The notes under the pieces were generated by a model, which worked only from the letters and a program-made list of their open reading frames with translations, was not told where the DNA came from and did not search any database. Position numbers and translations under genes: made by a program. Below are positions 47,351 through 64,000 of a stretch of 64,000 bases of DNA, one piece after another. Source of the stretch: Macrostomum lignano (taxonomy: Eukaryota); assembly GCA_002269645.1 (NCBI GenBank), contig NIVC01000114.1, positions 310,001 through 374,000 on the forward strand. Reading direction: 5' to 3'. Position 1 is the stretch's first letter. Each line of letters starts with the position of its first letter.

Positions 47351-48002
47351 TCTCAAGATCCCCTGTTGCCATGAACCCTCTTCATAGTTCGCAGTTATAA
47401 AAGTCACAAAATTGTAACACAAGAACGGGGTAAAAAGCAAACAGAAAAATAACCCGCATGCCATCCTTATTGGAACCATGCTTCATGCTTTCTATCTAAA
47501 GTTCACTAGTACAAAATTACAAATCCACAACAGGCTATTAATACTTTAATAAATAAGTAATATTTTCTAAATAAAGCAAACTATGATTTTGAATGCAGCA
47601 CAATCAATCTCCTTATTATTTTAACCGTTTGACGATGCCAATATCGGTGAATTCTTCGCAGCTTTGGCTGTTTGTTAGCTAACCGAGCAGCTCTCAGTTC
47701 TGCATTGCACGGATACAGCTGTCGATAATAGTACATTGGCCGGATTTGTGGGCTGTGATCCTGTATAGGTTGTGGAGTGCATTAGATTGCAGATTTTGAA
47801 TTGATTGTTTTCTTCGCAACTTCATTTATCTTTATAGCTTGTATTATCCAAACTTTGTATTTGCATTGTACACACTAGTCATTTAGATTGGAACTTTCTA
47901 TTTTTGTACCGAGTGGATTTATATAATTGTTACTGTTTATTTTTATCAGTAGAGATAATATTTCAGATTGATTGTTTCAATTAGACTGCTCAATAATATT
48001 CT

Positions 48003-48628
48003 GTCAGTTGGGGTTGCAGCCTCTCTCCCTCTGGGCTTCAGTCAGTTGGGGTTGCAGCCTCCCCCCCTCTGGGCTTCAGTCAGTTGGGGTTGCAGCCTCT
48101 CCCCCTCTGGGCTTCAGTCAGTTGGGGTTGCAGCCTTTCCCCCTCTGGGCTTCAGTCAGTTGGGGTTGCAGCCTCTCCCCCTCTGGGCTTCAGTCAGTTG
48201 GGTTTGCAGCCTTTCCCCCTCTGGGCTTTAGTCAGTTTGGGTTGCAGCCTTTCCCCCTCTGGGCTTCAGTCAGTTGGGGTTGCAGCCTCCCCCCCTCTGG
48301 GCTTCAGTCAGTTGGGGTTGCAGCCTCTCCCCCTCTGGGCTTCAGTCAGTTGGGGTTGCAGCCTCTCCCCCTCTGGGCTTCAGTCAGTTGGGGTTGCAGC
48401 CTCTCCCTCTGGGCTTCAGTCAGTTGGGGTTGCAGCCTCTCCCTCTGGGCTTCAGTCAGTTGGGGTTGCAGCCTCTCTCCCTCTGTGGGCTTCAGTCAGT
48501 TGGAGTTGCAGCCTCTCTCCCTCTCTGGGCTTCAGTCAGTTGGGGTTGCAGCCTCTCCCTCTGGGCTTCAGTCAGTTGGGGTTGCAGCCTCTCTCCCCCT
48601 CTGGGCTTAGTCAGTTGGGGTTGCAGCT
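48003..48628. repeat. ~38-bp minisatellite immediately upstream of the giant membrane-protein gene
   Basis: Unit GGGCTTCAGTCAGTTGGGGTTGCAGCCTCTCCCCCTCT, about 16 copies. Confidence 0.95.
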
Positions 48629-48735: not shown

Positions 48736-51700
48736 ATGCCCAATCATCTGGCCGACAGCCATCGTCTATGGCCAATCCTGATCGTCTTCCTGACCGGTGC
48801 TCCGGTCGGCCTGCTAGCGTCTGGAGTTTGCGAGCGACCACCGGATCCCAGCGTGGCCTATCCCATGTACAACCGCCTGTTGAACATCCGACTGCCGCTT
48901 CGCCAAGACCCGGAGACCAGAGGCTGGACAGCAGCCGCGCTGCGCTCCGGTCCCGACGGCCTCACAACTGCCGGCCTGTACGAGCTCCGCCACCTCCTAG
49001 CAACCGTCTTCCCCGGCAAGCTATGGGTGCACGACGCGTCATCTGCCTGGCTGGAAGCCAACGGCACCCAGTTGGGAATGCGAGATCTCATTGTTGAGCT
49101 GAACTCGCCAGCAGACTCCGACCACTGCAGCCACGTGTTCCAGCAGCACCTGTTTATGGCCGCAGAGACTCGCGCCGCTGATACGCACTTCAATCTCAGA
49201 CAGTTCTCCGACATTAGAGTCGAATATCACTACCTGTTTGGCGCCTGCCAGCCTTCAAAAGAGGAGACTGTGCACTTTTTCGGCGCCCTGAGGTTGGACA
49301 AATCCGAGAGCGCCTGTAGAAACTTGGCTAGCGCGCAGGATGCAGCAGCGACTGCGGCTGCTGGACTACCGGCGGATCTGCACCGCCTCACCGACCGGCT
49401 GTTCTTCATGCCGTCTAGCAGGTTCAACTCCACTGCACCTGCCAGCAATGCAACCAGCAGCGGCTTGATTGTCAGCGGCGGTGCACCTTTGCCAATCATC
49501 CTGCAGTCCAACTCTCGCCTGTTAGCCTTCATCATTGACTTTCGCCTTCGCGTAGACAATCCAACTACTGACTGGCTCATGTTGGACTCGGATATTGCTC
49601 AGCGCTATGCTCAACTGTCCCGTCACAGCGACGATTATGGCGTGCAGAGGCAGGGAGCGGCGCCCAGCTGTTTGAACTATCTGAACTTTGCCAGCCCACC
49701 GGCTACTCAACTGGCCGCCAGCTGCGTCGCCTGCTACGACATCTCAGCCTCCGTGTCTGTCAACATCAGCCTGAGCGAGTCTGCCGACATCCGGCCGCCT
49801 CAATGCGAAACCATCGCCTCGGTGCGCGCCGACAATAGCAGGCGCGTGATTGAAACTCGAGATATCTTGGCCTCCCTAGCTAGGAGCAACAGCACCGCTC
49901 ACCTGTTTGTGCCAGCCAATCATAGCAGCGCATACGTGCACATCCGGTCAGTGTCCTGCAGCGCCCAGCCCAAGCGTCTGGTTGTTGATCTGTCCATCAA
50001 ACTGAAAGCTCGCCACCCGGCACTGCTGCGCTATCCGCTGGTGCTGCAGTCCGGCCTGCAGCGCAACATCAATGCCTACCTGGTCAGGAAGCACCTGGGC
50101 TTGGCTAGTGTACGCCTGTCACAGCCTGTGTCCGCTTACAGCTCCGACTGCGGCAACGGCGGCAACGGCAAACCAGCGCCTGACAATGACCTGACCCTGC
50201 TAACCAGGCTCTGTGCAACAGCTAAGCTGGCCGGCTCTGTAAGCATCCTGAGACAGCAGTTCCAGCTCAGCTTAGACCGACAATCTCTTCTAGCACAGGT
50301 GCCAATAAGCCGGCCTGACCTGACCACCGGCCTAATTAGATTTTTTCTCATCGCTGCGGTATCTCAGATTGACAAGCCCGAGTACAGATCCTTGACTAGC
50401 AATCTGTCGCTGAGCGTGTCGCATCAGGTCGCTGGCAAAACTTCCAACGCTGCTGTTGCTGTCATCGACGTCAAAGTGTCGTACGCTGTTAACGACTCTT
50501 TCAAGAGCTCCGACGCCGCCGACTTCAACGCTCGATTTGTTCGTTCAATCCGTTTAATCAGCGGCGACTTTGGACCCCTGACTACTTTGAACTCCGCGGC
50601 CAATGTTGAGCGTCGCTCCTGCAACGCTGCCGCCACTGCCACGCCGGGGCCGGCGACAACGCCGAGTCCGACTCCAACGCCGAAAAAACCAGACGGCAGC
50701 ACCGCCGATCTCGATGCCAACCATGCACTTCGGCTGGTGTTCACCGTCAGCTCCAAGCTGCTGTACGGCGGCCGCATCGGTGACTACCTGCTGACTAGCG
50801 GCCTCAATGCTGCCCTGCGGCGCGCCGGTCTGCGTGATATTGAAGATGTCGATTTGACTGCCAAGGACTGTCGGGCTGGCGACACGTGTAGGGTGAGTTG
50901 TCTGACAGATTGTATTTTGTTGTTGCTTTCCTGATACTTAATGAGATTTTTACCTGACACCTGGTACTTAATGAGGTGCTTCGCGGACACTTAATGAGGC
51001 GCTCTTCTGACACTTAATGTTGTGTTTTCCTGACACTAAATGAGGTGCTCTCCTGACACTAAATGAGGTGCTCTCCTGACACTTAATGAGGTGCTCTCCT
51101 GACACTAAATGAGGTGCTCTCCTGACACTAAATGAGGTGCTCTCCTGACACTAAATGAGGTGCTCTCCTGACACTTAATGAGTTGCTCTCCTGACACTTA
51201 CTTGGGTGCTTCCCTGACACTAAATGAGGTGCTCTCCTGACACTAAATGAGGTGCTCTCCTGACACTTAATGAGGTGCTCTCCTGACACTTACTTGGGTG
51301 CTTCCCTGACACTTAATGAGGTGCTCTCCTGACACTAAATGAGGTGCTCTCCTGACACTTAATGAGTTGCTCTCCTGACACTTACTTGGGTGCTTCCCTG
51401 ACACTAAATGAGGTGCTCTCCTGACACTAAATGAGGTGCTCTCCTGACACTTAATGAGGTGCTCTCCTGACACTTACTTGGGTGCTTCCCTGACACTTAA
51501 TGAGGTGCTCTCCTGACACTAAATGAGGTGCTCTCCTGACACTAAATGAGGTTCTCTCCTGACACTAAATGAGGTGCTCTCCTGACACTTAATGAGGTGC
51601 TCTCCTGACACTTACTTGGGTGCTTCCCTGACACTAAATGAGGTGCTCTCCTGACACTAAATGAGGTGCTCTCCTGACACTTAATGAGGTGCTCTCCTGA

Positions 51701-54700
51701 CACTTACTTGGGTGCTTCCCTGACACTTAATGAGGTGCTCTCCTGACACTAAATGAGGTGCTCTCCTGACACTTAATGAGTTGCTCTCCTGACACTTACT
51801 TGGGTGCTTCCCTGACACTAAATGAGGTGCTCTCCTGACACTAAATGAGGTGCTCTCCTGACACTTAATGAGGTGCTCTCCTGACACTTACTTGGGTGCT
51901 TCCCTGACACTTAATGAGGTGCTCTCCTGACACTAAATGAGGTGCTCTCCTGACACTAAATGAGGTGCTCTCCTGACACTAAATGAGGTGCTCTCCTGAC
52001 ACTTAATGAGGTGCTCTCCTGACACTTACTTGGGTGCTTCCCTGACACTAAATGAGGTGCTCTCCTGACACTAAATGAGGTGCTCTCCTGACACTTAATG
52101 AGGTGCTCTCCTGACACTTACTTGGGTGCTTCCCTGACACTTAATGAGGTGCTCTCCTGACACTAAATGAGGTGCTCTCCTGACACTAAATGAGGTTCTC
52201 TCCTGACACTAAATGAGGTGCTCTCCTGACACTTAATGAGGTGCTCTCCTGACACTTACTTGGGTGCTTCCCTGACACTAAATGAGGTGCTCTCCTGACA
52301 CTAAATGAGGTGCTCTCCTGACACTTAATGAGGTGCTCTCCTGACACTTACTTGGGTGCTTCCCTGACACTTAATGAGGTGCTCTCCTGACACTAAATGA
52401 GGTGCTCTCCTGACACTTAATGAGTTGCTCTCCTGACACTTACTTGGGTGCTTCCCTGACACTAAATGAGGTGCTCTCCTGACACTAAATGAGGTGCTCT
52501 CCTGACACTTAATGAGGTGCTCTCCTGACACTTACTTGGGTGCTTCCCTGACACTTAATGAGGTGCTCTCCTGACACTAAATGAGGTGCTCTCCTGACAC
52601 TAAATGAGGTGCTCTCCTGACACTAAATGAGGTGCTCTCCTGACACTTAATGAGGTGCTCTCCTGACACTTACTTGGGTGCTTCCCTGACACTAAATGAG
52701 GTGCTCTCCTGACACTAAATGAGTTGCCTCCCTGATACTAAATGAGGTGCTCTCCTGACACTTACTTGGGTGCTTTCCTGACACAAAATAAGGTGCTCTC
52801 CTGACACTAAATGATGTGCTTTCCTGACACTGAATGAGGTGCACTCTTGATACTAAACGAGGTGCTCCGATCTCCGATCTCCTACTAAAGGAAGTGCTCT
52901 CCTGACACTTACTGGGGTGCTTCCCCGACACTTACTGAGGTTTTTCCCTGACACTTACTGAGGTTCTCCCTGACACTTACTGAGGTTTTTCGCTGACACT
53001 TACTGAGGTTCTCCCTGACACCTACTGAGATTCTCCCTGACACTTACTGAGGTTCTCCCTGACACTTACTGAGGTTCTCCCTGACACTTACTGAGGTTTT
53101 TCGCTGACACTTACTGAGGTTCTCCCTGACACCTACTGAGATTCTCCCTGACACTTACTGAGGTTTTCCCTGACGCTGCTTTTTGCAATATTTGAAACCA
53201 ATTTTTACACTAAAAAACTGTTAGCCACAATGACTATAATCCATTTCAAAACTACCTTATTATCGCTCGCAGATCACGGCCATGATATTGTGCAGCAACC
53301 ACAGCAGCAGCAGCAGCAATGCTACATCACCCGGTATGCACGACATCACCCTGACAGCTCTAACAGCCTCTCTATCCGGCGACTCCCTGCTTCAACCGGT
53401 GGACCTACGCGCCGACATTGTGCCCACTCTGCCGCCTCAACAGATCCCGGCCTCTTCAATAATCTATCGCTACGCAACGTCGAGTTATTTCAACCGACCA
53501 CCGCCAGTGATGGGGTCAACCAGCATCGCACCGGTCCGCCTGACCATCCTGTGGCGCTTGGTCTCCGTCAATGCATCCGCGCCGTTGGCCTATCGCAGCT
53601 GGCCAACTAATCCGCAATCTAGCGGCGCCAACCGGCTGCAATTCCTGCTCGAACAGATGCTAGTAGATCTGCTTGGAGGGCGGCTCGTGTCTTGGCCAGT
53701 GGCTGTCAGATACAAATCCGATTCTAAACTGGCTCGGCTAGACGCTCTGGTAGCTCTGGATGCCAAGTCGCCTCTGGCCAGACTGTCTGATGAGGCATCG
53801 GCTACTGCCGATAAAATGCCGCTATTTAGCTTTGTGAGACTGTCGGATCTTCGATTGTCGGGCCAGCCAACCGCTTCTGGACTGTTCAACAGCGCACTCA
53901 TGCTGCAGACCTACTTGTTGCGGAATTTTGTTAGCAATGCCACTCTGCAGGTGAGGCCTATTTTTCATAGTTATTTGATTTTCATTTATCATGAAGTTCA
54001 TTGAGTGGGTCATATAGTCTACCTAGTGGGTCATAGCGTCTATCGGGTGGGTCATTCGAGTCCATGGAAGTCATAGTCTATCTATTAGGTCATAATCTAT
54101 CGGGGGTTTATTGAGCGTCTATCTGGTGGTCATAGAGTATCGCGTGGGTCAGTCTATCGGGTGGGTCATAGTGTCTGTCGAATGAGTGAGTCATAGTGTC
54201 TGTCGAATGAGTGAATCATAGTGTCTGTCGAATGAGTGAGTCATAGTGTCTGTCGAATGAGTGAGTCATAGTCTATCGGGTGTTTCATAGTGTCTATCAG
54301 GTGGGTCAGAGTGTCTATCGGGTGGGTCATTGAGTGTATCTATCAGGTGGGTCAGAGTGTCTATCGGGTGGGTCATTGAGTGTCTATCAGGTGGGTCATT
54401 GAGTGTATATCAGGTGGGTCAGTGTATCTATCGGGTGGATCAGTGTATCTATCGGGTGGGTCATTGAGTGTCTATCAGGTGGGTCATTGAGTGTATATCA
54501 GGTGGGTCATTGAGTGTATATCAGGTGGGTCATTGAGTGTATATCAGGTGGGTCAGTGTATCTATCGGGTGGATCAGTGTATCTATCGGGTGGGTCATTG
54601 AGTGTCTATCAGGTGGGTCATTGAGTGTATATCAGGTGGGTCAGTGTATCTATCGGGTGGATCAGTGTATCTATCGGGTGGGTCATTGAGTGTCTATCAG

Positions 54701-57700
54701 GTGGGTCATTGAGTGTATATCAGGTGGGTCATAGTGTCTATCGGGTGGATCAGTGTGTCTATCGGGTGGGTCATTGAGTGTATATCAGGTGGGTCATTGA
54801 GTATATATCAGGTGGGTCATTGAGTGTATATCAGGTGGGTCATTGAGTGTATATCAGGTGGGTCATTGAGTGTATATCAGGTGGGTCATTGAGTGTATAT
54901 CAGGTGGGTCATTGAGTGTATATCAGGTGGGTCATAGTGTCTATCGGGTGGATCAGTGTGTCTATCGGGTGGGTCATTGAGTGTCTATCAGGTGGGTCAT
55001 TGAGTATATATCAGGTGGGTCATTGAGTGTATATCAAGTGGGTCATAGTATCTATCATATGGGTCATAGTGTCCATCAGATGGGTCATATTGTCTATCAG
55101 GTGGGTCATAGTGTATCAGATGGGTCATAATGTCTATCAGGTGGTTCATGGAGTCATGGAGGGGGTCATACACCCGAGAAGTGGTCATGCACCGGAAAGC
55201 ACATTATTAGAGCTTTGCGACTTTGTAGTTCAGAATTTCGCCTGCAGTTCAACCCAGTCCATCCCTAACACCCCCCTCTCCCAGGCCATGCCCGAGAGCG
55301 ACCTTCACCGCCTGCTCTCCGGCAAGCTGCGCTTCGTCCAGTCGGTCATTTTCTCCGGCCAGCAGGGCCGGCCCCAGCTGGTCAGCTTCGAGTACAGAGC
55401 CCGCCGTCAGCTCGATGCCAGCATTCGAATTGATGGCCTCAGCCGTATCGCCTGGCCGGCAAATAGAACTGCAGTCTCAGCAACTGGAGCTAATTTCGAT
55501 GAGACCTCGCTGAGCAAGCTGATCAACTCTGAGCTTGAGGCTCTTCAAGCCAATGTTAACGTGTTTCCACTGGTGTTTGACAATCAGAGCTCCACATTGC
55601 GCCTGCTGGACACTCGAACTGGCCTGACAGCTCCGCGCTGGTGCGACCTGCTGCTCCGGTTCCGTCCTTCGCCCGCCGACATTGCCGTAGCTGCCGCCGA
55701 CGCCTCCTGGCTGCCGGTAGCCAATCGCCTGTCGGCTTGGCTCGGTGCCAACGCCAGTCACGTGACCGTTCTGTCGCTGCCCACGGATCCGTCTGGCACC
55801 ATCGAGGCCTTGGCAGTGGTGCCGCAGGCTGGCGCCGCCGTCAGCTGCTCCCAGGTGGCTGTCCAACTGTTGAACTGGTCGGCCACGGCTACCAGCGACA
55901 AGCGACTGATCGCGGCCAGGTCTCTGTCTGACAATGTCCTCTCGACAAGTGACGGTCCGTCCACAGCGAACCTGACTGTCCTGGTGCGCCACTCCGCTCT
56001 GCAGCCGTTCAGCCGGCAGAGCAGCGACTCATCCGGCGAGTATTTCTGCTTCCTCATCACCTGGGCTCACGCTCTGTTCAATACCAATAGCGAAGGCGGA
56101 GTCTGCGTCTCTAATCTGGTTGAGCAGCATCGAATTCGACTCAATCCGCTGTCCAATGCCACCTCGGCTGCTCTGCAACTGTCAACCGTGTCAGCCTTCA
56201 CCAGCATGCCGCCAGACACCGTCATGCAGCGCTTCTGGGCCTTCAAGAACTTCTACCTGTCATCCAATGAGTCCTTCATCGATCTGGACCGGATGCGCCT
56301 GCAGCAGCTGGATCAGCAGCGGCCCAACTCCAGCGAGGACTCCTATGCTAGCCTCATCATCAGGCAGCTGCCTCCGGCTCCAGAGCATCGGGTTGTCAAT
56401 GTCAGCACAGTTGCTATGGAAACTACAACTGCGGCTACCGTTGTCCAGACTTCAGTGGCAACATCAGAAGCGACTACTGCAACAACTACTACTGCTGCTG
56501 CTACTGATGAGGCAAAAGCTACACCAGCTCCCGGAGGTCCTCTGCCAACAACCCAGCAGACTCTTAAAGGTGCTACAGCTGCAGCTACCACAACTCCAGC
56601 TCCGACATCTCCGCACCCGATGGGACCTGACTACATTCCTATCGATCGCATGGCAACTCTAAGCATCAACTTGAGCATGCCAGCTGATCCCTGGCTAGCT
56701 CGCTACTTCTTGGCAGCGGCGGCACCTCAAAGCGCCAATCAAACTTCTGCTGAAGAAGCCAAAGCCCTTAGCGACTATCTGCTCAAGTCAGCTCTTCAAC
56801 AGAGTCTGCAACGTTCCGCTTGGCAGATTGCTTCCGATGAGATTGGCGCAGTTAGAATCTCTGTGGACTCCAACAGCATGACCATCTACATCAGCGTTGA
56901 CTTGCTTCTGCCTGCCAGTAGAAACATTGCCGATTTAGAGTCGGTCCTGCGCACTGGCGTGGATCAGTCTATGCTGCTGAGCACAGTGTTCTCAAAGCGA
57001 GCCTACTCAGTGCTGATTGTCAATTTACCTACCAGACGCTACCTGTACCGGCCTCAGCCTGCCGTAGCAACACCTCAGCCGCCGCCTGCTTCAGCTCGCC
57101 TGTCCATCGACCAGACCATGCTGATTAGACTCGCGGACACCGCGCCAGACTACCTGCGACTGAGAACTGTAGGCGGCATGGACTCTAGCGCGAGGGAGGA
57201 CCTGCTGTTGGACTTCCTGTTCCAGCAGCTGGTCGCCGACGCCTGCGGCAGCCAGCAGTTGATTGGGCGGCCGCGACTCATTCGTTACAAAGCCGACAAG
57301 GAGCTGGCTCTGCTCCAGCTGAGATATGACATCAGCCAGGTGAATGCGAGCAGACTGAAGCTGTTCAGCTCCGACTTTGCCTCGGCCTGGCAGCGTCGGC
57401 AACCGTCAGCCAGCACTCTGCGCAGCATCCTGTACCTGGACTTCCGGTCTGGCCCGCCACCGCCTCATCGCGGCCTGCTGCTCTACCAGCGCCTCCGTCT
57501 GGAGAGCTACATCAACAAGAAGTCGCTCATGTCGCTGCCGTCAGACTACCTGGCATTGCTGTTGCGGCCCAAGATTCGATACGTCATGCAACAGGTGTTC
57601 CCCGGTGGCAGCGCCTCCGTGCCGCAGTTCCTCGACGTTGACGCCACCTACGCGAAGAAGGACGGCGCTCTGGAGATTGTCGCCCTGACTCGGGTGGCCA

Positions 57701-60700
57701 TTCCGTCCGGCTTCCGGCTGGCCAAACTTGAGCAGCGCCTGCAGCTGCACGTCATGCAGCGGCTCGAGCAGCTGGCGAACGACATCAACCTGGTGCCCAG
57801 CGTGTTCAGCGTCGGCAAAACCGACGTTCGAGTTGTCGACCTAAAGGAAGGCCTCAGCCAGCCGTTCTGGTGCGACTTAGTCTACTCATTCACCGTGGAA
57901 TCCGCTAGGCTGCCTGCTCAAGGATTCGAACTCGCGACCTATCTGAGTCAGCTGTTGGCGCCGAAACTGCAGCAGCCTACTCACCTGGAACGGCTGGCAG
58001 TGCTGCAGTGGGGCCCGGCAACCGGTTCCAGCTCCACACACCTGCTAGAAGTTCAAGCCCTGGTCACCATGAGCTCATCCCGCTCGCTGCCATTTGACCA
58101 AGCCACCAGCATCTTAATGAAGGCGGCCGCGGCTGTGGAGTCGCCAAGTCGCCTGACCACCCGTGCAGTTGCGGCACCGTTCCACGGCTCCAGCTCTGCC
58201 GCCAGCCTCGGCCCCGGCTCTTCAACTCGCTACCGACGCGTGAACCAGGCCGTGACCTTCATCAGCGGCAACTCCGCTGCTCTTGCAGACTCCGACAAGC
58301 TGGCCAAGTACGCCTGCCACCTGTACCAGAGCTCTCTCGAGTCCGCCCACTGGTTCGCTCTCTACGTGGTGCCGCACAGCTGCTCCGCCGCGGTGACCGC
58401 CGCCAACATTCGAGTCGCCGTCAGCCAGCAGCAGCCGCAGCTGTCGATCCCAGGCCTGCGCATGAACATCTCCGCCACGGTGGTGTCGCAGACCAAGTCA
58501 GTTGAAGTCGCTTCGACAGCTACTAGAGCATTCCAGAGTGCACTGGCTATTAAGAACTTCTACTTCAATTCCGGGGAGCTGGTGCTGTCCGAAGGAGTTC
58601 ACGTACAGGATGTCAGCGTGTACATCTCCGTGCAGCCTGATAGCGTCACCAAACCTGCGCAGCTGGTGACGAACTCCACCACAACCGGCACCTCTGCAGC
58701 CGCTGCAACCACCACTGACAGCACCGACACCACCGCCACCACCGCCATCACGGTCGCTACCACAACTAGCCCAGCATCCGTATCAACCATTGCAACAACT
58801 ACTAGGCCGAGAACTGTACTCTACTACAACTTGAAGCTGCAGTTCCCTCTGTCCAATGCTACCTGGGACTACCTGGCTGAACCGGACTCGCCCATGGCGC
58901 TATTGCTGGCCCGTTCTCTGCTCAACGACGCCCTTTTGGCTAACGCTAGCGTTTCAAAACTTGCTCAACACCTTATTGTCACCAACATCAGCCGGGACCT
59001 GTCGGACAATGCAACTACAGCCGAACTGGGACTCGGCCAGGCTCTGGCCAAATTTCAACCGCCATCGGCTGTAGATTCGCCCGACCACCTAAGACTGTCT
59101 GTTGCTCAAGCCGTCTCCAACTGGCCTCTGGCTGCTGCACTGTTCACTGATCGTCCCATTGTCACTGTGTGGCCAGAGTTCGAACCCCTGCCTACTCCGC
59201 CGCAGAACTCTACAGAGTCTGATACTCCAGCGCAACCGCCAGCTAGCAAGAGTCGTCGAAGGCGTTCAACAAGTTCTGCAGCGTCGTCCGAGTTTGTTGA
59301 GCACCGACTGCAGCTGTTTGCCAGCCCATCTCTGCCAGTTTTCTATCGCTACAGAGACATTCCACTGCGCCCAGACCCTCTGCTGTCCTTCCTCACCCAG
59401 CGGCTGCTCAACACCGCTATGCAGCGCTGGACCAATCAGACCAGCTCAGACTGGCCTAAACTGGCCTGGCTGCGATCTGACAATATCTCCGTGACTCTGT
59501 GCATCCGCTATCCGAAACCTGCCGGCCTCAGTCAGCGCCAAGTCATGGACGGCTTCTCTGCAGCCTGGGTGGCTGTTAATAATGAGCTGGCCAGCTGCTC
59601 GCTCTGTCTAGCTCGGCACCAGGAGCTGCGCCCGGTGGCAACCGCCGATGCCGCCAACGAGACAGTCGGCTTGTTGATCTACCAGCGACTGCAGTTTGAC
59701 GGCTTTGTCGGCTCAGACACGATGCGCAAACTCAGCCACGACGATCTCAACCAGCTGATGCGGCACCGGCTGCATTTCATCCTCGCCCAGCTGTACCCCG
59801 GCAACGGCACCAGCCTCGGCAATGTCAGCAGCCTCACCTTAGCCGGCTTCGATTTTGAGTGCTACGGTCGCAACTCCACCGTGATCGCCTTCTTGTTGGT
59901 CCGCCTGCTGGCTAGAGCAGACGTTTCCGAGGCTGACATCCGGGATCACGTGACCAAGCAGCTGCTGCGTCTGGCCACCAACGAGCACGTGCTGCCAGCC
60001 CAGCTGTCCAGCAGAGGCATCGACCTGCGGCTGCTGACCAGGCGCACCGGACTGCCCGCGGGCGTTGCTGACTGGTTCGACGTCCAGGCCACCTTCGACT
60101 ACGCCGAGGAGGGCCCGTCGCTGCACGGCTACGCTTTGGCAGCCGGGGCTCGACGCCATCTCGAAGGGCTTCTAAGCCGGTCGTCGGCTTCGTCCAACAG
60201 CATCAGAGTGGTGCAGCTCCGCCTGATGCGCTGGAAGCGTCTGGGATCTGGCGGTCCCGGCCGGCACCACCAGCTTGTCAGCGTGTTGGCCACGCTCGCC
60301 TCCACTGGCCCGCGCAATCCGGACTCCACGCCACGGCAGCTGCGAGCTCAGCTTGCCAACCTGACGGGTCTGACCGGCTCCAACCTCACTCTGCCTTTGC
60401 AGGTTTGTTTATTTGTTTGTTGCTTTGTTTGTCTGGCTGACTCGAGGCTTGCTGAGATGCTATGGCTCAATGGATGGGGAGTTGCTGAGATGCCAATTGG
60501 CTCAATGGGGAGTTGCTGAGATGCCAATTGGCTCAATGGGGAAGTTGCTGAGATGCTATAGCTCAGTGGGGGAGTTGCTGAGATGCGATGGCTCAGTGGG
60601 GGGTTGCTGAGATGCCATGGCTCACAGGGGGCTATCACAAAGATCACTACAAATGATCTTTACCAGCAGATTCCTCCCGCTTTCCTCCATGCAGGACTTC

Positions 60701-62116
60701 GACCACCAGCCGCAGCACTATGACCGGCACCACCTGCAGCTCATGCACTCCGGCGTGGCCGTGCAGCAGTCCGTGCACCTGGTGGACAGCGGCCCCGCTC
60801 AGCCAGACAGCCGCAACGACAGCAGCCTCACCAGCGACTTTATCTGCCTGCTAATCGCCTCAGCCTTCCGCCAGCGCGGCAGCGGTCGCCTCCGGTTTGT
60901 TGACGACCTGTGCGCCGCCCGGGTCACCCAGCGCGGCCTCCTCCGGCCGCATCCGCTGTCAGCTCGCCGCATCCCAGCAACTGCCGCAGCCGCCTACTTC
61001 ACCCTGCACAACTCCAGCCAGCCATTCAATCCTGACGAAGCCACTGACGCTATCAACCAGCTGGCCAGCTCGTTGAATGCCTACGCCGACATCGCTGGCA
61101 GGTCCTTGGCCTTGGGCGAGGTGACCCCGATCCAGCCGGTGCCGATCTACCAGCTGCTGCGCTTCGATTCCGCCGGATTTCCAGACGATCTGCGCAACTC
61201 TAGCTCGCTGCTGTACCTGGACACCACCGAGGCTATCAAGCGATCCCTGGCTGTCTACCTTCGCGGAGTTGCCAACCTGTTCTCCGGCCAGGTCACTGCA
61301 GTTCGGTACAGCCCCGGGTCCATCCTGGTCTCTGTCAGCTACCAGGTCTACCCTAGGCTGCTCGACACCGGCTCTGCTGCCAAGCATATCGAGCTTAACA
61401 CTGAGGCTCTGTTCACCTCTAGCAGTCCTTTCCACGGCCTGCAGCTCGACCGAGACGGCTCCTTCGTGTCCACCGCGCCTATCGCCGTCCATCGTCAGCC
61501 TAAGTTGGACAAAACCGATGAACAGTCTGTGCCAATCGCCATCTACTGCATCCTGGGCGTGGCCTGCCTCCTGCTGCTCATCCTGAGCACTCTACTCATT
61601 ATTCGACTGTACAGAATGCGCCGCAACAACTACGGCAGCAGGATCCGGCCGCAGCAGCCGTCCACTAACAGCCAGCGGCGAAGTCTGATGTTTGACAGTG
61701 ACGATAAGCCGCAGCAGCAGCAGCAGCAGCAGCAGAGAGACGCTGAGAAAGGCTTGACAGCACCTGCAACCACAGCACCAGCACCAGCACCCGCACCAGC
61801 CAGTGAGAACCCCGCAGCGTCAAGGCCTGATGCGCCCGAGAGCAGCAACAGGAGGAACAGCAACATCAACAACACCGGCAGAGCCGCCGATCCAACCCGC
61901 CTGCCCAGCACGGAGGTTCCGGCGCCCCCGCGGCTGCCTCAGCCGCCAGAAAGTCGACGGGCCTCAGCCGCTGCATCGAGTCGACGGGCTTCGGCTGCAA
62001 GTTGCAGTCGAACGGCAGGAACTGCGCCTAATGCTGGGTCTAATTTAGCGCCTAATGCGGCACCTAATGTGGCACCAAGCGCGTCGCCAAACGCTCATCC
62101 GGCAAGCCAAGTCTGA
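48736..62116 (+). CDS. Giant type I membrane protein, ~3124 aa, mucin/SEA-like with internal super-repeats; exons 48736-50892, 53273-53950, 55285-60402, 60695-62116
   Basis: Signal-peptide-like start MPNHLADSHRLWPILIVFLTGAPVGLLASG. All three introns are phase 0 GT-AG, and the exon 2/3 junction (FVSNATLQ|AMPESDLHRLL) restores similarity to the internal repeat FVGSDTMRKLSHDDLNQLM. Many NxS/T sequons, Thr-rich linkers, SEA-like segment with YSPGSILV, one TM (IAIYCILGVACLLLLILSTLLII) and a low-complexity cytoplasmic tail. Confidence 0.88.
50930..53175. repeat. 23-bp minisatellite with higher-order structure filling intron 1 of the giant gene
   Basis: Units GACACTAAATGAGGTGCTCTCCT / GACACTTACTTGGGTGCTTCCCT, about 95 copies. 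Confidence 0.96.
54005..55165. repeat. 23-bp minisatellite filling intron 2 of the giant gene
   Basis: Unit TATCAGGTGGGTCATTGAGTGTA. Confidence 0.94.
60445..60625. repeat. Short ~31-bp tandem repeat in intron 3 of the giant gene
   Basis: Unit GAGTTGCTGAGATGCCAATTGGCTCAATGGG, about 6 copies. Confidence 0.85.
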
Positions 62117-62604: not shown

Positions 62605-64000
62605 AATGAAGTGCTAATCTATCTCTTCAATGTGAATGCAGGTATAGAATGGATTGCTAATCTATCTCTTCAATGTGAATTCAGGTATAGAATGGATTGC
62701 TAATCTATCTCTACAATATGAATTCAGGTATAGAATGGATTGCTAATCTATCTCTTCAATGTGAATGCAGGAATAGAATGGATTGCTAATCTATCTCTTC
62801 AATATGAATACAGGAACAGAATGGATTGCTAATCTATCTCTTCAATATGAATGCAGGAATAGAATGGATTGCTAATCTATCTCTTCAATGCGAATGCAGG
62901 AATAGAATGGATTGCTAATCTATCTCTCCAATATGAATGCAGGAATAGAATGGATTGCTAATCTATCTCTTCAATGTGAATGCAGGAATAGAATGGATTG
63001 CTAATCTATCTCTTCAATGCGAATGCAAGAATAGAATGGATTGCTAATCTATCTCTCCAATATGAATGCAGGAATAGAATGGATTGCTAATCTATCTCTT
63101 CAATATGAATGCAGGAATAGAATGGATTGCTAATCTATCTCTTCAATATGAATGCAGGAATAGAATGGATTGCTAATCTATCTCTCAATATGAATGCAGG
63201 AACAGAATGGATTGCTAATCTATCTCTTCAATGTGAATGCAGGAATAGAATGGATTGCTAATCTATCTTTTCAATATGAATGCAGGAATAGAATGGATTG
63301 CTAATCTATCTCTTCAATGTGAATGCAGGAATAGAATGGATTGCTAATCTATCTCTCCAATATGAATGCAGGAATAGAATGGATTGCTAATCTATCTCTT
63401 CAATATGAATACAGGAATAGAATGGATTGCTAATCTCTCTACAATATGAATTCAGGTATAGAATGGATTGCTAATCTATCTCTTCAATGTGAATGCAGGA
63501 ATAGAATGGATTGCTAATCTCTCTACAATATGAATTCAGGTATAGAATGGATTGCTAATCTATCTCTTCAATATGAATACAGGAACAGAATGGATTGCTA
63601 ATCTATCTCTTCAATATGAATGCAGGAATGGAATGGATTGCTAATCTATCTCTTCAATATGAATGCAGGAATAGAATGGATTGCTAATCTATCTCTTCAA
63701 TGTGAATGCAGGAATAGAATGGATTGCTAATCTATCTCTTCAATGCGAATGCAAGAATAGAATGGATTGCTAATCTATCTCTCCAATATGAATGCAGGAA
63801 TAGAATGGATTGCTAATCTATCTCTTCAATATGAATGCAGGAATAGAATGGATTGCTAATCTATCTCTCAATATGAATGCAGGAACAGAATGGATTGCTA
63901 ATCTATCTCTTCAATGTGAATGCAGGAATAGAATGGATTGCTAATCTATCTTTTCAATATGAATGCAGGAATAGAATGGATTGCTAATCTATCTCTTCAA
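62605..64000. repeat. 43-bp minisatellite/satellite running off the window end
   Basis: Unit GGATTGCTAATCTATCTCTTCAATATGAATGCAGGAATAGAAT, more than 30 copies. Confidence 0.96.

What the first reader, a model, noticed from the sequence alone, without database searches (positions are those of the whole stretch)
48736..62116. Giant surface protein built from ~730-770-aa super-repeats of several divergent modules
Seen: recurring motifs with a shared period. [WCDL/WCDL/WFDV] at 55639, 57868, 60073 (743 and 735 aa apart). KNFY at 56245 and 58552 (769 aa). LQFLLEQMLVD...VRYKSDSKLA (exon 2) versus LDFLFQQLVAD...IRYKADKELA (exon 3). LLLYQRL...KIRYVMQQVFPG versus LLIYQRL...RLHFILAQLYPG versus N-terminal MYNRL...LRHLLATVFPG. 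DYLLTSGLNAALRR versus DYLLKSALQQSLQR, each after a Thr-rich linker. Inference: about four tandem copies of a 5-6-module cassette (likely SEA/ferredoxin-like folds), mostly encoded in one 5.1-kb exon. I do not recognise this architecture from known mucins, IMPG, agrin or dystroglycan; it is a candidate novel glycocalyx, adhesion or mechanosensory protein.
Basis: partly seen in the sequence, partly recalled or inferred. Interest (0 to 1): 0.8.

Follow-up and report, generated by a model that had tools for sequence, protein, structure and literature searches.

The report
Giant modular ovary-expressed flatworm membrane glycoprotein
This is a real, four-exon gene of the flatworm Macrostomum lignano for a 3,124-residue membrane-anchored glycoprotein built from a ~740-residue five-module cassette repeated about three and a half times; it has no detectable relatives outside this species and published RNA-seq places it in the ovary/germline, so it is most likely a lineage-specific coat protein of the oocyte or egg surface rather than a body-surface mucin.

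Summary
Every quoted motif is at its stated coordinate. The four open stretches join through phase-0 GT-AG introns into a 3,124-aa protein. This protein is identical to GenBank PAA90302.1 (hypothetical protein Mlig000778.g1, M. lignano).

Self-comparison gives collinear matches at offsets of 732-770 and 1481-1502 aa. The best reaches 44.7 bits, against at most 28.1 bits in 20 composition-preserving shuffles. The eight strongest module pairs all join modules of the same type.

The architecture runs: signal peptide; a divergent Cys-richer head; cassettes of modules A-B-C, Thr-rich linker, D, linker, E; a truncated cassette; a juxtamembrane module; one TM helix; and a low-complexity tail.

No Pfam domain or PDB sequence match was found, and an exhaustive HMMER search of 1.84 billion proteins found no homologue. 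AlphaFold models are poor (pLDDT about 40). They do give β-α-β-β-α-β order in four module types. The juxtamembrane module holds the protein's only GS[VIL]3 motif, in the β2-β3 turn, as in SEA domains. SEA membership remains unproven.

Published tables class the gene as ovary-region, germline-enriched and higher in isolated worms. Two genomic copies differ with pN/pS about 0.09.

Verdict: a lineage-restricted variant of tethered modular surface glycoproteins, probably on the oocyte surface. Interest is moderate.

The parts
48736..50892 (+). Exon 1 (aa 1-719): signal peptide, divergent Cys-richer N-terminal head, first Thr/Pro linker, most of module 1D
   Evidence: ATG at 48736 and GTGAGT donor at 50893. 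The spliced product is identical to PAA90302.1.
48736..48831 (+). Signal peptide, aa 1-32 (MPNHLADSHRLWPILIVFLTGAPVGLLASGVC)
   Evidence: Read directly from the sequence: N-terminal hydrophobic core followed by small residues. No predictor was run.
53273..53950 (+). Exon 2 (aa 720-945): end of module 1D, linker, module 1E, and the first 17 residues of cassette 2
55285..60402 (+). Exon 3 (aa 946-2651, 5,118 bp): cassettes 2 and 3 and modules 4A-4B
   Evidence: Acceptor CTCTCCCAG|GCC and donor GTTTGT. The same join is used in both deposited proteins.
57475..59670 (+). Cassette 3 (aa 1676-2407), the reference copy: A 1676-1799, B 1800-1925, C 1926-2072, Thr-rich linker 2073-2120, D 2121-2247, linker 2248-2281, E 2282-2407
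50617..50694 (+). Thr/Pro/Ala-rich linker of cassette 1 (aa 628-653)
   Evidence: Low-complexity mask; 77% S/T/P/A. O-glycosylation is inferred.
56401..56628 (+). Thr-rich mucin-like linker of cassette 2 (aa 1318-1393)
   Evidence: 70% S/T/P/A.
58666..58809 (+). Thr-rich mucin-like linker of cassette 3 (aa 2073-2120)
   Evidence: 56% S/T, 79% S/T/P/A.
59254..59265 (+). Tetrabasic RRRR (aa 2269-2272) inside linker 2 of cassette 3; a possible proprotein-convertase site
   Evidence: The only [RK][RK][RK]R match in the protein. Cleavage is inferred, not tested.
60695..62116 (+). Exon 4 (aa 2652-3124 plus stop): module 4C, juxtamembrane module, TM helix, cytoplasmic tail
61136..61531 (+). Juxtamembrane A-like / SEA-like module (aa 2799-2930)
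61316..61330 (+). GSILV (aa 2859-2863), a candidate SEA-type autoproteolysis motif
   Evidence: The only GS[VIL]3 in 3,124 aa. It lies in the turn between predicted strands β2 and β3. It aligns in register with PGSVVV of the MUC1 SEA domain. The chance of such a motif in a 132-aa stretch of this composition is 1.3%.
61535..61603 (+). Single transmembrane helix (aa 2932-2954, IAIYCILGVACLLLLILSTLLII) followed by RLYRMRR
   Evidence: Highest Kyte-Doolittle 19-residue windows in the protein.
61604..62113 (+). Cytoplasmic tail (aa 2955-3124): poly-Q, Pro/Ala/Ser-rich, two RRAS sites
   Evidence: This is the least constrained region between the two genomic copies (3.6 differences per 100 aa).

Best explanation
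The locus encodes a lineage-restricted type I membrane glycoprotein, Mlig000778.g1. It is made mainly in the female germline (growing oocytes) of Macrostomum lignano and displayed on the oocyte/egg surface as a long, glycosylated, modular coat protein.

Shown:
- A signal peptide.
- A ~2,900-aa ectodomain with 42 N-glycosylation sequons.
- A divergent, Cys-richer N-terminal head.
- A cassette of five different ~115-145-aa modules (A-B-C, Thr-rich linker, D, linker, E), present twice in full, once truncated (A-B-C) and once partly recognisable.
- A last A-like module next to a single TM helix, and a 170-aa low-complexity tail.
- Purifying selection between the two genomic copies.
- Ovary-region and germline-enriched transcription.

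Inferred:
- The modules are independently folding α/β (β-α-β-β-α-β, SEA/ferredoxin-like) domains.
- Strung together with O-glycosylated spacers, they make an extended stalk with the divergent head at its tip.
- The juxtamembrane module may self-cleave at G2859/S2860 as SEA domains do. The ectodomain would then be held non-covalently and could be shed.
- The coat protects or lubricates the oocyte/egg surface, or mediates contact with sperm or the egg envelope.
For: - Gene model: identical to a deposited protein.
- Second copy: 98-99.2% identical in the exons but only ~87-92% in the flanks, with 52 synonymous against 14 non-synonymous codon differences, pN/pS 0.09.
- Internal repeats: significant and collinear.
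- Membrane features: TM helix, signal peptide, linkers and sequons read from the sequence.
- Fold hints: predicted β-α-β-β-α-β order in modules A, D, E and the juxtamembrane module. Weak Foldseek matches are almost all ferredoxin-like α/β domains and include MUC16 SEA and TMPRSS6.
- SEA hints: a unique GSILV in the β2-β3 turn of the membrane-proximal module, and SEA as the only relevant sub-threshold Pfam family there.
- Expression, from Brand et al. 2020 (PMC7336406), Tables S6, S8 and S9: class [+,+,0] 'Ovary 2'. Read counts are head 19, head+testis 194, +ovary 5,865, whole worm 9,425. The gene is flagged germline_FACS and OvI_down (log2FC -2.1, padj 2e-12). The g5 copy has the same profile.
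- Reliability of that class: in Arbore et al. 2015 (PMC4490696), 5 of 6 tested [+,+,0] transcripts were expressed in the ovaries, in the growth zone and often in developing eggs.
- No homologue beyond the species. This fits the fast evolution of reproduction-related genes reported for the genus (PMC7336406).
Against: - There is no in situ or protein localisation for this gene itself. Positional RNA-seq is regional, and the authors note a specialised gut epithelium in the gonad regions.
- Both structure models are of low confidence (pLDDT 40 and 42). No Foldseek match is significant. The profile-profile comparison with SEA domains is negative. BLASTP of module 2A against the TMPRSS11D SEA domain finds nothing.
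- Modules B and C are essentially unpredicted.
- Surface display, glycosylation, cleavage and any role in the egg coat or in sperm contact are all inferred.
- The two k-mer searches did not even recover the protein's own cluster, so that tool's negatives carry little weight.
- The exhaustive search covered only aa 1452-2651.
Confidence: 0.5

Rival explanations
1. Somatic surface protein: a glycocalyx, adhesion or mechanosensory protein of the epidermis, adhesive organs or gut.
For: The build (signal peptide, mucin-like linkers, single TM helix, membrane-proximal SEA-like module) is that of epithelial tethered mucins. M. lignano has a lectin-reactive glycocalyx whose proteins that paper does not name (PMC6410801). 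The authors of the positional data warn that a specialised gut epithelium lies in the gonad regions.
Against: The head fragment, which is rich in epidermis and includes pharynx and anterior gut, gives 19 reads against 5,865 once the ovary region is included. Adding the tail, with its adhesive organs, adds little (class [+,+,0]). The independent FACS/irradiation data set flags the gene as germline. ISH-validated ovary genes share the same Ovary 2 / germline_FACS / OvI_down signature.
Confidence: 0.1
2. Precursor of a released egg-envelope, eggshell-granule or yolk-granule component. The membrane anchor would serve only for sorting, and the ectodomain would be cut off (RRRR at 2269-2272, or G/S at 2859/2860) and built into extracellular or granular material.
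For: There is one tetrabasic site in an exposed linker and one SEA-type motif near the membrane. Macrostomum oocytes make their own yolk and eggshell granules (figure legend in PMC4490696). From general knowledge: zona pellucida proteins are made as TM precursors and released at a furin site.
Against: The RRRR site is 660 residues from the membrane, so it would release only part of the ectodomain. The protein has no similarity to known eggshell, vitelline or ZP families. The 170-aa cytoplasmic tail with RRxS sites is kept in both copies.
Confidence: 0.2
3. The modules are not SEA-like at all. They would be one or several new folds, and the GSILV motif and β-α-β-β-α-β order would be coincidence. 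The protein would then be an unrelated kind of modular receptor or coat protein.
For: No module reaches the Pfam SEA threshold. hhalign of the A/juxtamembrane profile against five PDB-verified SEA domains gives a probability of 0.4%. No Foldseek match has E <= 0.001. Modules within a cassette show no similarity to each other. A GS[VIL]3 motif occurs somewhere in 15% of shuffled proteins of this composition.
Against: The motif lies in the one module next to the membrane and in the predicted β2-β3 turn, where SEA domains cleave. Smith-Waterman alignment puts it in register with MUC1 PGSVVV. The juxtamembrane module takes three of the five best of 84 module-by-SEA comparisons. Module 2A aligns end to end with the TMPRSS11D SEA domain, with 2 of 5,000 shuffles reaching the score, about 0.03 after correction for the 84 comparisons. 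The weak Foldseek hits are dominated by ferredoxin-like domains.
Confidence: 0.3
4. Annotation artefact, pseudogene or translated repeat DNA.
For: The window is packed with minisatellites that give long spurious ORFs.
Against: The model has four long ORFs joined by phase-0 canonical introns and a coherent SP-ectodomain-TM-tail layout. A second copy has pN/pS 0.09. Thousands of RNA-seq reads map to a 9,375-nt transcript.
Confidence: 0.01

Closest known systems
MUC16 (CA125): tethered mucin with tandem SEA domains
   Same: Giant type I membrane glycoprotein. The ectodomain is a long series of ~120-aa α/β modules separated by O-glycosylated Ser/Thr/Pro spacers, ending in a module next to the TM helix. 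MUC16 SEA structures (8vm1, 7sa9, 8gkl) appear among the weak Foldseek matches of cassette 3.
   Different: MUC16 repeats one 156-aa unit (SEA plus linker) many times and carries a huge PTS domain. Here five mutually unrecognisable modules form a 740-aa cassette, and linkers make up only about 6% of the protein (185 aa). There is no sequence or profile similarity. Expression is in the germline, not the epithelium.
MUC1/MUC3/MUC12/MUC13/MUC17-type tethered mucins (SEA next to the membrane, cleaved at G|SVVV)
   Same: Signal peptide, a single TM helix, and a membrane-proximal module with PG-S-I-L-V in the β2-β3 turn about 70 residues before the TM helix. It aligns in register with MUC1 FRPG|SVVV, whose sequence was verified against PDB 2acm/6bsb.
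   Different: There is no long PTS tandem-repeat domain. The Pfam SEA match is far below threshold (12 bits against 26.4). Cleavage is untested, and the tail is unrelated.
Dystroglycan
   Same: From general knowledge: it combines α/β (S6-like and SEA-like) modules, a mucin-like stretch, a G|SIVV-type autoproteolytic site near the membrane, one TM helix and a Pro-rich tail.
   Different: No DAG1 or cadherin-like domains are detected. This protein is four times longer and has a cassette repeat and no PPxY motif. It is not an orthologue.
Giant repeat-built egg-surface sperm receptors (sea urchin EBR1, abalone VERL): analogy from general knowledge only
   Same: They are very large, fast-evolving, female-germline glycoproteins of the egg surface, made of many tandem copies of a domain or domain pair. 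This gene is ovary/germline-expressed, giant, repeat-built and without detectable relatives.
   Different: The domains differ entirely (TSP1/CUB or ZP-N against the unknown α/β modules here). No evidence for sperm binding exists for this protein. The comparison is functional, not one of homology.
IMPG1/IMPG2, agrin, perlecan, enteropeptidase (other SEA-containing matrix or surface proteins)
   Same: They combine SEA modules with mucin-like stretches.
   Different: Their EGF, laminin-G, LDLa, Kazal and protease domains are all absent here.

Membership tests
SEA domain (Pfam PF01390) | Match to the family profile at or above the curated threshold | tested here: not met
   Of 21 modules scanned, only the juxtamembrane module matches, at E 0.22-0.23 and 12.1 bits against a cut-off of 26.4. 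hhalign of the juxtamembrane plus A-module profile against five PDB-verified SEA domains gives a probability of 0.4%.
SEA domain (Pfam PF01390) | β-α-β-β-α-β α/β-sandwich fold | tested here: inconclusive
   AlphaFold2 gives this order of elements in modules A, D, E and the juxtamembrane module, but at pLDDT 40-42 overall and at best ~65-70 in module A. Foldseek finds no match with E <= 0.001. The weak matches are mostly ferredoxin-like folds and include MUC16 SEA.
SEA domain (Pfam PF01390) | G|S[VI]VV autoproteolysis motif in the β2-β3 turn (present in the cleaving subset of SEA domains) | tested here: met
   GSILV at aa 2859-2863 is unique in the protein and lies between predicted strands 60-68 and 71-80 of the juxtamembrane module. 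It is in register with MUC1. This holds at the sequence level only.
SEA domain (Pfam PF01390) | Actual self-cleavage leaving a non-covalent heterodimer | not testable with these tools
   This needs expression of aa ~2790-2931, SDS-PAGE or mass spectrometry, and an S2860A control.
Tethered (transmembrane) mucins | Type I topology: signal peptide, one TM helix, short cytoplasmic tail | tested here: met
   Hydropathy maximum at aa 2932-2954, an N-terminal hydrophobic leader and a 170-aa tail. No dedicated predictor was run.
Tethered (transmembrane) mucins | A long Pro/Thr/Ser tandem-repeat (PTS) domain that makes up most of the ectodomain | tested here: not met
   There are only four short S/T/P/A-rich linkers of 26-76 aa, together 185 aa or about 6% of the protein. 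They are not tandem repeats of one unit.
MUC16-type SEA arrays | Many tandem copies of one homologous SEA-plus-linker unit | tested here: not met
Dystroglycan / IMPG / agrin / ZP egg-coat proteins | Their signature domains (DAG1, EGF, laminin G, ZP and others) | tested here: not met
   No Pfam family at E <= 1 in exons 1-3, and only spurious weak hits over the TM region in exon 4.
Ovary-region / female-germline genes of M. lignano (expression class, not a protein family) | Positional class [+,+,0] or [0,+,0], germline_FACS, lower in octets than in isolated worms | tested here: met
   Tables S6, S8 and S9 of PMC7336406 for Mlig000778.g1 and .g5. Five of six genes of this class were ovary-expressed by ISH in PMC4490696. 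This gene itself has no ISH.

The most novel reading that the evidence does not exclude
A previously undescribed, Macrostomum-restricted family of giant oocyte-surface proteins. In it a five-domain cassette of highly diverged SEA-like modules has been duplicated as a unit, giving a MUC16-like stalk that arose independently. It would carry a fast-evolving Cys-rich head that acts in egg-sperm or egg-envelope interaction, and a self-cleaving juxtamembrane module that lets the coat be shed at fertilisation or egg laying.
Probability: 0.3. Interest if true: 0.65.

Novelty: new variant of a known kind. Interest (0 to 1): 0.45.

Why it matters
Nothing turned up in my literature searches on the proteins of the flatworm oocyte or egg surface. 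M. lignano is a leading model for sexual selection, sexual conflict and sex allocation in hermaphrodites, where molecules at the egg-sperm interface are wanted.

This gene is abundantly transcribed, ovary/germline-specific, socially responsive, under purifying selection within the species and undetectable outside it. That makes it an obvious candidate for RNAi and tagging, both established in this species.

For protein architecture it is a clean example of duplication at the level of a multi-domain cassette rather than a single domain. If the modules prove SEA-like, it would extend tandem-SEA stalks beyond vertebrate mucins. It also shows the limits of current tools: a protein of about 20 modules with no Pfam, PDB or confident AlphaFold assignment.

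Tried and rejected
1. Whole-protein k-mer search.
2. Two further k-mer searches: one with a linker-free cassette alignment, one with the exon-4 ectodomain. Both found nothing, not even the protein's own cluster. I treat these negatives as uninformative.
3. Exhaustive phmmer of aa 1452-2651 against 1.84 billion representatives. It returned only the protein's own cluster.
4. Pfam scans on exons and on 21 separate modules. No family reached threshold.
5. PDB sequence and profile searches. They gave only chance hits.
6. hhalign of the cassette profile against itself, to test whether modules A-E are diverged copies of one domain. No off-diagonal match appeared.
7. Choice of query for the exhaustive search. 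A test showed that a profile of cassettes 2-4 detects cassette 1 no better than single sequences do, so a single 1,200-aa query was used. A fragment-wise alignment (A3) was discarded as scattered.
8. AlphaFold2 of cassette 3 and of the juxtamembrane module, using internal repeats as the alignment. Confidence was low. Foldseek against the PDB was not significant.
9. BLASTP of module 2A against the TMPRSS11D SEA domain. It found nothing, so the Smith-Waterman result (p about 4e-4 before correction) stays a weak lead.
10. Literature and supplement searches for the gene identifiers. Only PMC7336406 lists the gene. Its orthogroup tables are truncated in the held copy, so presence in M. spirale, M. 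hystrix or M. pusillum could not be read.


Full report
WHAT IS THERE

The region 48736-62116 on the + strand holds four long open stretches in a G+C-rich island (52-62% G+C against 34-45% around it). They join through canonical GT-AG introns, all in phase 0. The exons are 48736-50892, 53273-53950, 55285-60402 and 60695-62116. The product is 3,124 aa.

It is identical, residue for residue, to GenBank PAA90302.1 / UniProt A0A267GYB9, 'hypothetical protein BOX15_Mlig000778g1' of the free-living flatworm Macrostomum lignano. A second genomic copy, PAA92588.1 (Mlig000778g5) on contig NIVC01000045.1, is 99% identical. The gene and its exon structure are therefore already in the databases, but only as an uncharacterised protein.

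IS IT A REAL, CONSTRAINED GENE?

The two copies are 98.0-99.2% identical in the exons, while the alignable flanking DNA is only about 87-92% identical. Over exons 1-3, 52 codons differ synonymously and 14 non-synonymously, giving pN/pS of about 0.09. Amino-acid differences are rare in the ectodomain (0.1-0.95 per 100 aa), absent from the signal peptide and TM helix, and most frequent in the cytoplasmic tail (3.6 per 100 aa plus a poly-Q length change). This is the signature of a functional gene.

CHECK OF THE OBSERVATION

- Self-comparison of 130-250-aa pieces gives a ladder of collinear matches at offsets of 732-770 aa (E down to 1e-9) and at twice that, 1481-1502 aa. A further match at about 392-404 aa links module 4A to the juxtamembrane module.
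- Twenty shuffles that preserve local composition never exceeded 28.1 bits and gave 0-1 hits of 27 bits or more. The real protein gave 44.7 bits and 13 such hits.

ANATOMY

In order along the protein:

- Signal peptide, aa 1-32.
- Head and cassette 1, aa 33-928.
- Cassette 2, aa 929-1675.
- Cassette 3, aa 1676-2407. It consists of A 1676-1799, B 1800-1925, C 1926-2072, a Thr-rich linker 2073-2120, D 2121-2247, a linker 2248-2281 containing the only tetrabasic site (RRRR, 2269-2272), and E 2282-2407.
- Truncated cassette 4, aa 2408-2798 (modules A, B, C).
- Juxtamembrane A-like module, aa 2799-2930.
- TM helix, aa 2932-2954, followed by RLYRMRR.
- A 170-aa Pro/Ala/Ser/Gln-rich tail with two RRAS sites.

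There are 42 N-x-S/T sequons in the ectodomain. The four S/T/P/A-rich linkers total 185 aa, about 6% of the protein.

Cassette boundaries do not coincide with introns. The exon 2/3 junction lies 17 residues into module 2A. A profile of the cassette compared with itself shows no similarity between the five module types, so 'several divergent modules' is accurate.

WHAT ARE THE MODULES?

Sequence methods give nothing significant:

- There is no Pfam family for any exon or for any of the 21 modules. The one exception is a sub-threshold SEA match of the juxtamembrane module (E 0.22, 12.1 bits against a cut-off of 26.4).
- No PDB chain matches by sequence or by profile.

AlphaFold2, given only the internal repeats as an alignment, produced low-confidence models: cassette 3 at mean pLDDT 40.0 and pTM 0.25, and the juxtamembrane module at pLDDT 42.2. 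The order of predicted elements is nevertheless β-α-β-β-α-β, or α-β-β-α-β where the first strand was not called. This holds in module A (the best part, pLDDT ~65-70), in D, in E and in the juxtamembrane module. Modules B and C are essentially unpredicted.

Foldseek against the PDB gave no match at E <= 0.001. The weak matches of cassette 3 are nearly all ferredoxin-like α/β domains: phage tail terminators, ACT domains, IS200-type transposases, dimeric α/β barrels and a designed ferredoxin fold. They include MUC16 SEA domains (8vm1, 7sa9, 8gkl) and TMPRSS6 at ranks 32-49. The juxtamembrane model matched EpsM/PulM and IS608 domains, which are also ferredoxin-like.

THE SEA QUESTION

I verified MUC1, human and mouse MUC16 and TMPRSS11D SEA sequences against PDB chains and aligned them (A7).

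Evidence against membership:
- The profile-profile comparison with the juxtamembrane plus A-module alignment was negative (probability 0.4%).

Evidence in favour:
- The motif GS[VIL][VIL][VIL] occurs once in 3,124 residues, at aa 2859. It lies in the juxtamembrane module, in the turn between its predicted β2 and β3. That is the place and sequence (PG|SILV against MUC1 PG|SVVV) at which SEA domains cleave themselves. The chance of such a motif in a 132-aa stretch of this composition is 1.3%, and anywhere in the protein 15%.
- Module 2A aligns end to end with the TMPRSS11D SEA domain. Two of 5,000 shuffles reach the score, about 0.03 after correction for 84 tests. BLASTP sees nothing for that pair.

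My reading is that an α/β, SEA/ferredoxin-like fold is plausible for several modules, perhaps 55%. Membership in the SEA family is not demonstrated.

DISTRIBUTION

An exhaustive phmmer search with aa 1452-2651 against 1.84 billion representative proteins returned only the protein's own cluster. The k-mer searches were uninformative, because two of them failed to recover even the self-cluster. At the sensitivity available, the protein is restricted to M. lignano or its close relatives. Congeners more than 50% identical would be hidden in the same cluster.

WHERE IS IT EXPRESSED?

The re-annotation tables of Brand et al. 2020 (BMC Genomics 21:462, PMC7336406) list both copies.

- Table S8 is the positional RNA-seq of Arbore et al. 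2015. Its fragments are A head, B head+testes, C head+testes+ovaries and D whole worm. For Mlig000778.g1 (length 9,375 nt, which equals the 3,124 codons plus the stop codon) the counts are 19, 194, 5,865 and 9,425. For g5 they are 7, 129, 3,395 and 6,666. Both fall in class [+,+,0], 'Ovaries 2'.
- Table S6 adds 'germline_FACS', from the FACS/irradiation data of Grudniewska et al. 2016, and 'OvI_down'.
- Table S9 gives log2FC -2.11 for octets against isolated worms (padj 2e-12).

ISH-validated ovary genes in the same table typically carry this same triple signature. [quoted passage not shown] The authors caution that positional classes are regional and that a specialised gut epithelium exists there. 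There is no ISH for this gene itself.

HOW IT MOST LIKELY WORKS

Shown: a secretory leader, a very long modular and sequon-rich ectodomain with short mucin-like spacers, one TM helix, a tail, purifying selection, and ovary/germline transcripts.

Inferred: growing oocytes insert the protein into the oolemma. About twenty compact α/β modules and O-glycosylated spacers form an extended stalk that presents the divergent Cys-richer head far from the membrane. The juxtamembrane module may self-cleave at G2859/S2860, leaving the ectodomain non-covalently attached and releasable. The coat would protect or lubricate the oocyte/egg surface, or take part in contact with sperm or with the forming egg envelope.

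I put about 0.9 on 'type I surface or secretory-pathway glycoprotein', about 0.75 on oocyte expression, about 0.55 on SEA/ferredoxin-like modules, about 0.35 on autoproteolysis, and about 0.3 on a specific role in the egg coat or in sperm interaction.

RIVALS

- A somatic glycocalyx, adhesion or mechanosensory protein is disfavoured by the 300-fold head-to-ovary-region difference and by the germline flag.
- A precursor released into the eggshell, envelope or granules remains open.
- Modules of a new fold also remain open.
- An artefact or pseudogene is excluded.

COMPARISON WITH KNOWN SYSTEMS

The protein works most like a tethered mucin of the MUC16 or MUC1 type: a stalk of α/β modules and glycosylated spacers with a cleavable module at the membrane. 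It fails the defining tests of those families. It has no PTS domain, no profile match and no single repeated unit. Dystroglycan shares the α/β-module, mucin-stretch, G|S-site, TM-helix and Pro-rich-tail logic, but none of its signature domains are present. From general knowledge only, the nearest functional analogues in setting are the giant, repeat-built, fast-evolving egg-surface receptors EBR1 (sea urchin) and VERL (abalone), which use unrelated domains.

VERDICT

The gene is known as a model but uncharacterised. It is best filed as a new, lineage-restricted variant of modular tethered surface glycoproteins, with a cassette-level repeat and a female-germline setting. Interest is moderate, 0.45. 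The protein is a good experimental candidate in a tractable model, but lineage-specific giant surface proteins are not in themselves surprising, and both the fold and the function remain inferred.

Noticed in passing
window 50966-53174, 54161-55150, 60449-60624: All three introns of the gene are almost entirely filled by minisatellite arrays with periods of 22-31 bp. Examples are 83 copies of a 23-bp unit in intron 1 and 38 copies of another 23-bp unit in intron 2. The splice sites sit at the edges of the arrays.
   Followed up: partly
window 47999-48627: A 38-bp tandem array (16.6 copies, 93% matches) ends about 110 bp upstream of the start codon, so it lies in the presumed promoter or 5'UTR. 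It also creates long spurious ORFs that run into exon 1.
   Followed up: no
window 61709-61732: The poly-Q run in the cytoplasmic tail differs in length between the two genomic copies (8 Q here, 5 Q in Mlig000778.g5). The tail is the least conserved part of the protein.
   Followed up: partly
window 13309-14055 (- strand): A 248-aa ORF has a poly-Q stretch and tandem CCCH zinc fingers (Pfam zf_CCCH_4 at E 5e-9 and zf-CCCH at E 8e-8). It looks like an exon of a tristetraprolin-like RNA-binding protein gene.
   Followed up: partly
window 16190-17455 (+ strand): A 421-aa ORF with several hydrophobic stretches and no Pfam match. It may be another unannotated or orphan membrane-protein exon.
   Followed up: no
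window 62605-64000, and many stretches of 2400-40400: The rest of the window is dominated by long tandem arrays. They include a 43-bp unit in 32.6 copies just downstream of the gene, and TCTA/CTGT-type arrays that give 'SIYL' or 'CLSV' ORFs of up to 615 aa. There are also strong strand-composition swings, with GC skew down to -0.53.
   Followed up: no
L001 (NIVC01000045.1 288454-320880): Brand et al.'s tables list a third locus of the same cluster, Mlig000778.g8. Its transcript is only 1,209 nt, it is essentially unexpressed (counts 9, 9, 4, 4) and it is classed Non-Specific. It may be a fragmentary or decayed copy.
   Followed up: no
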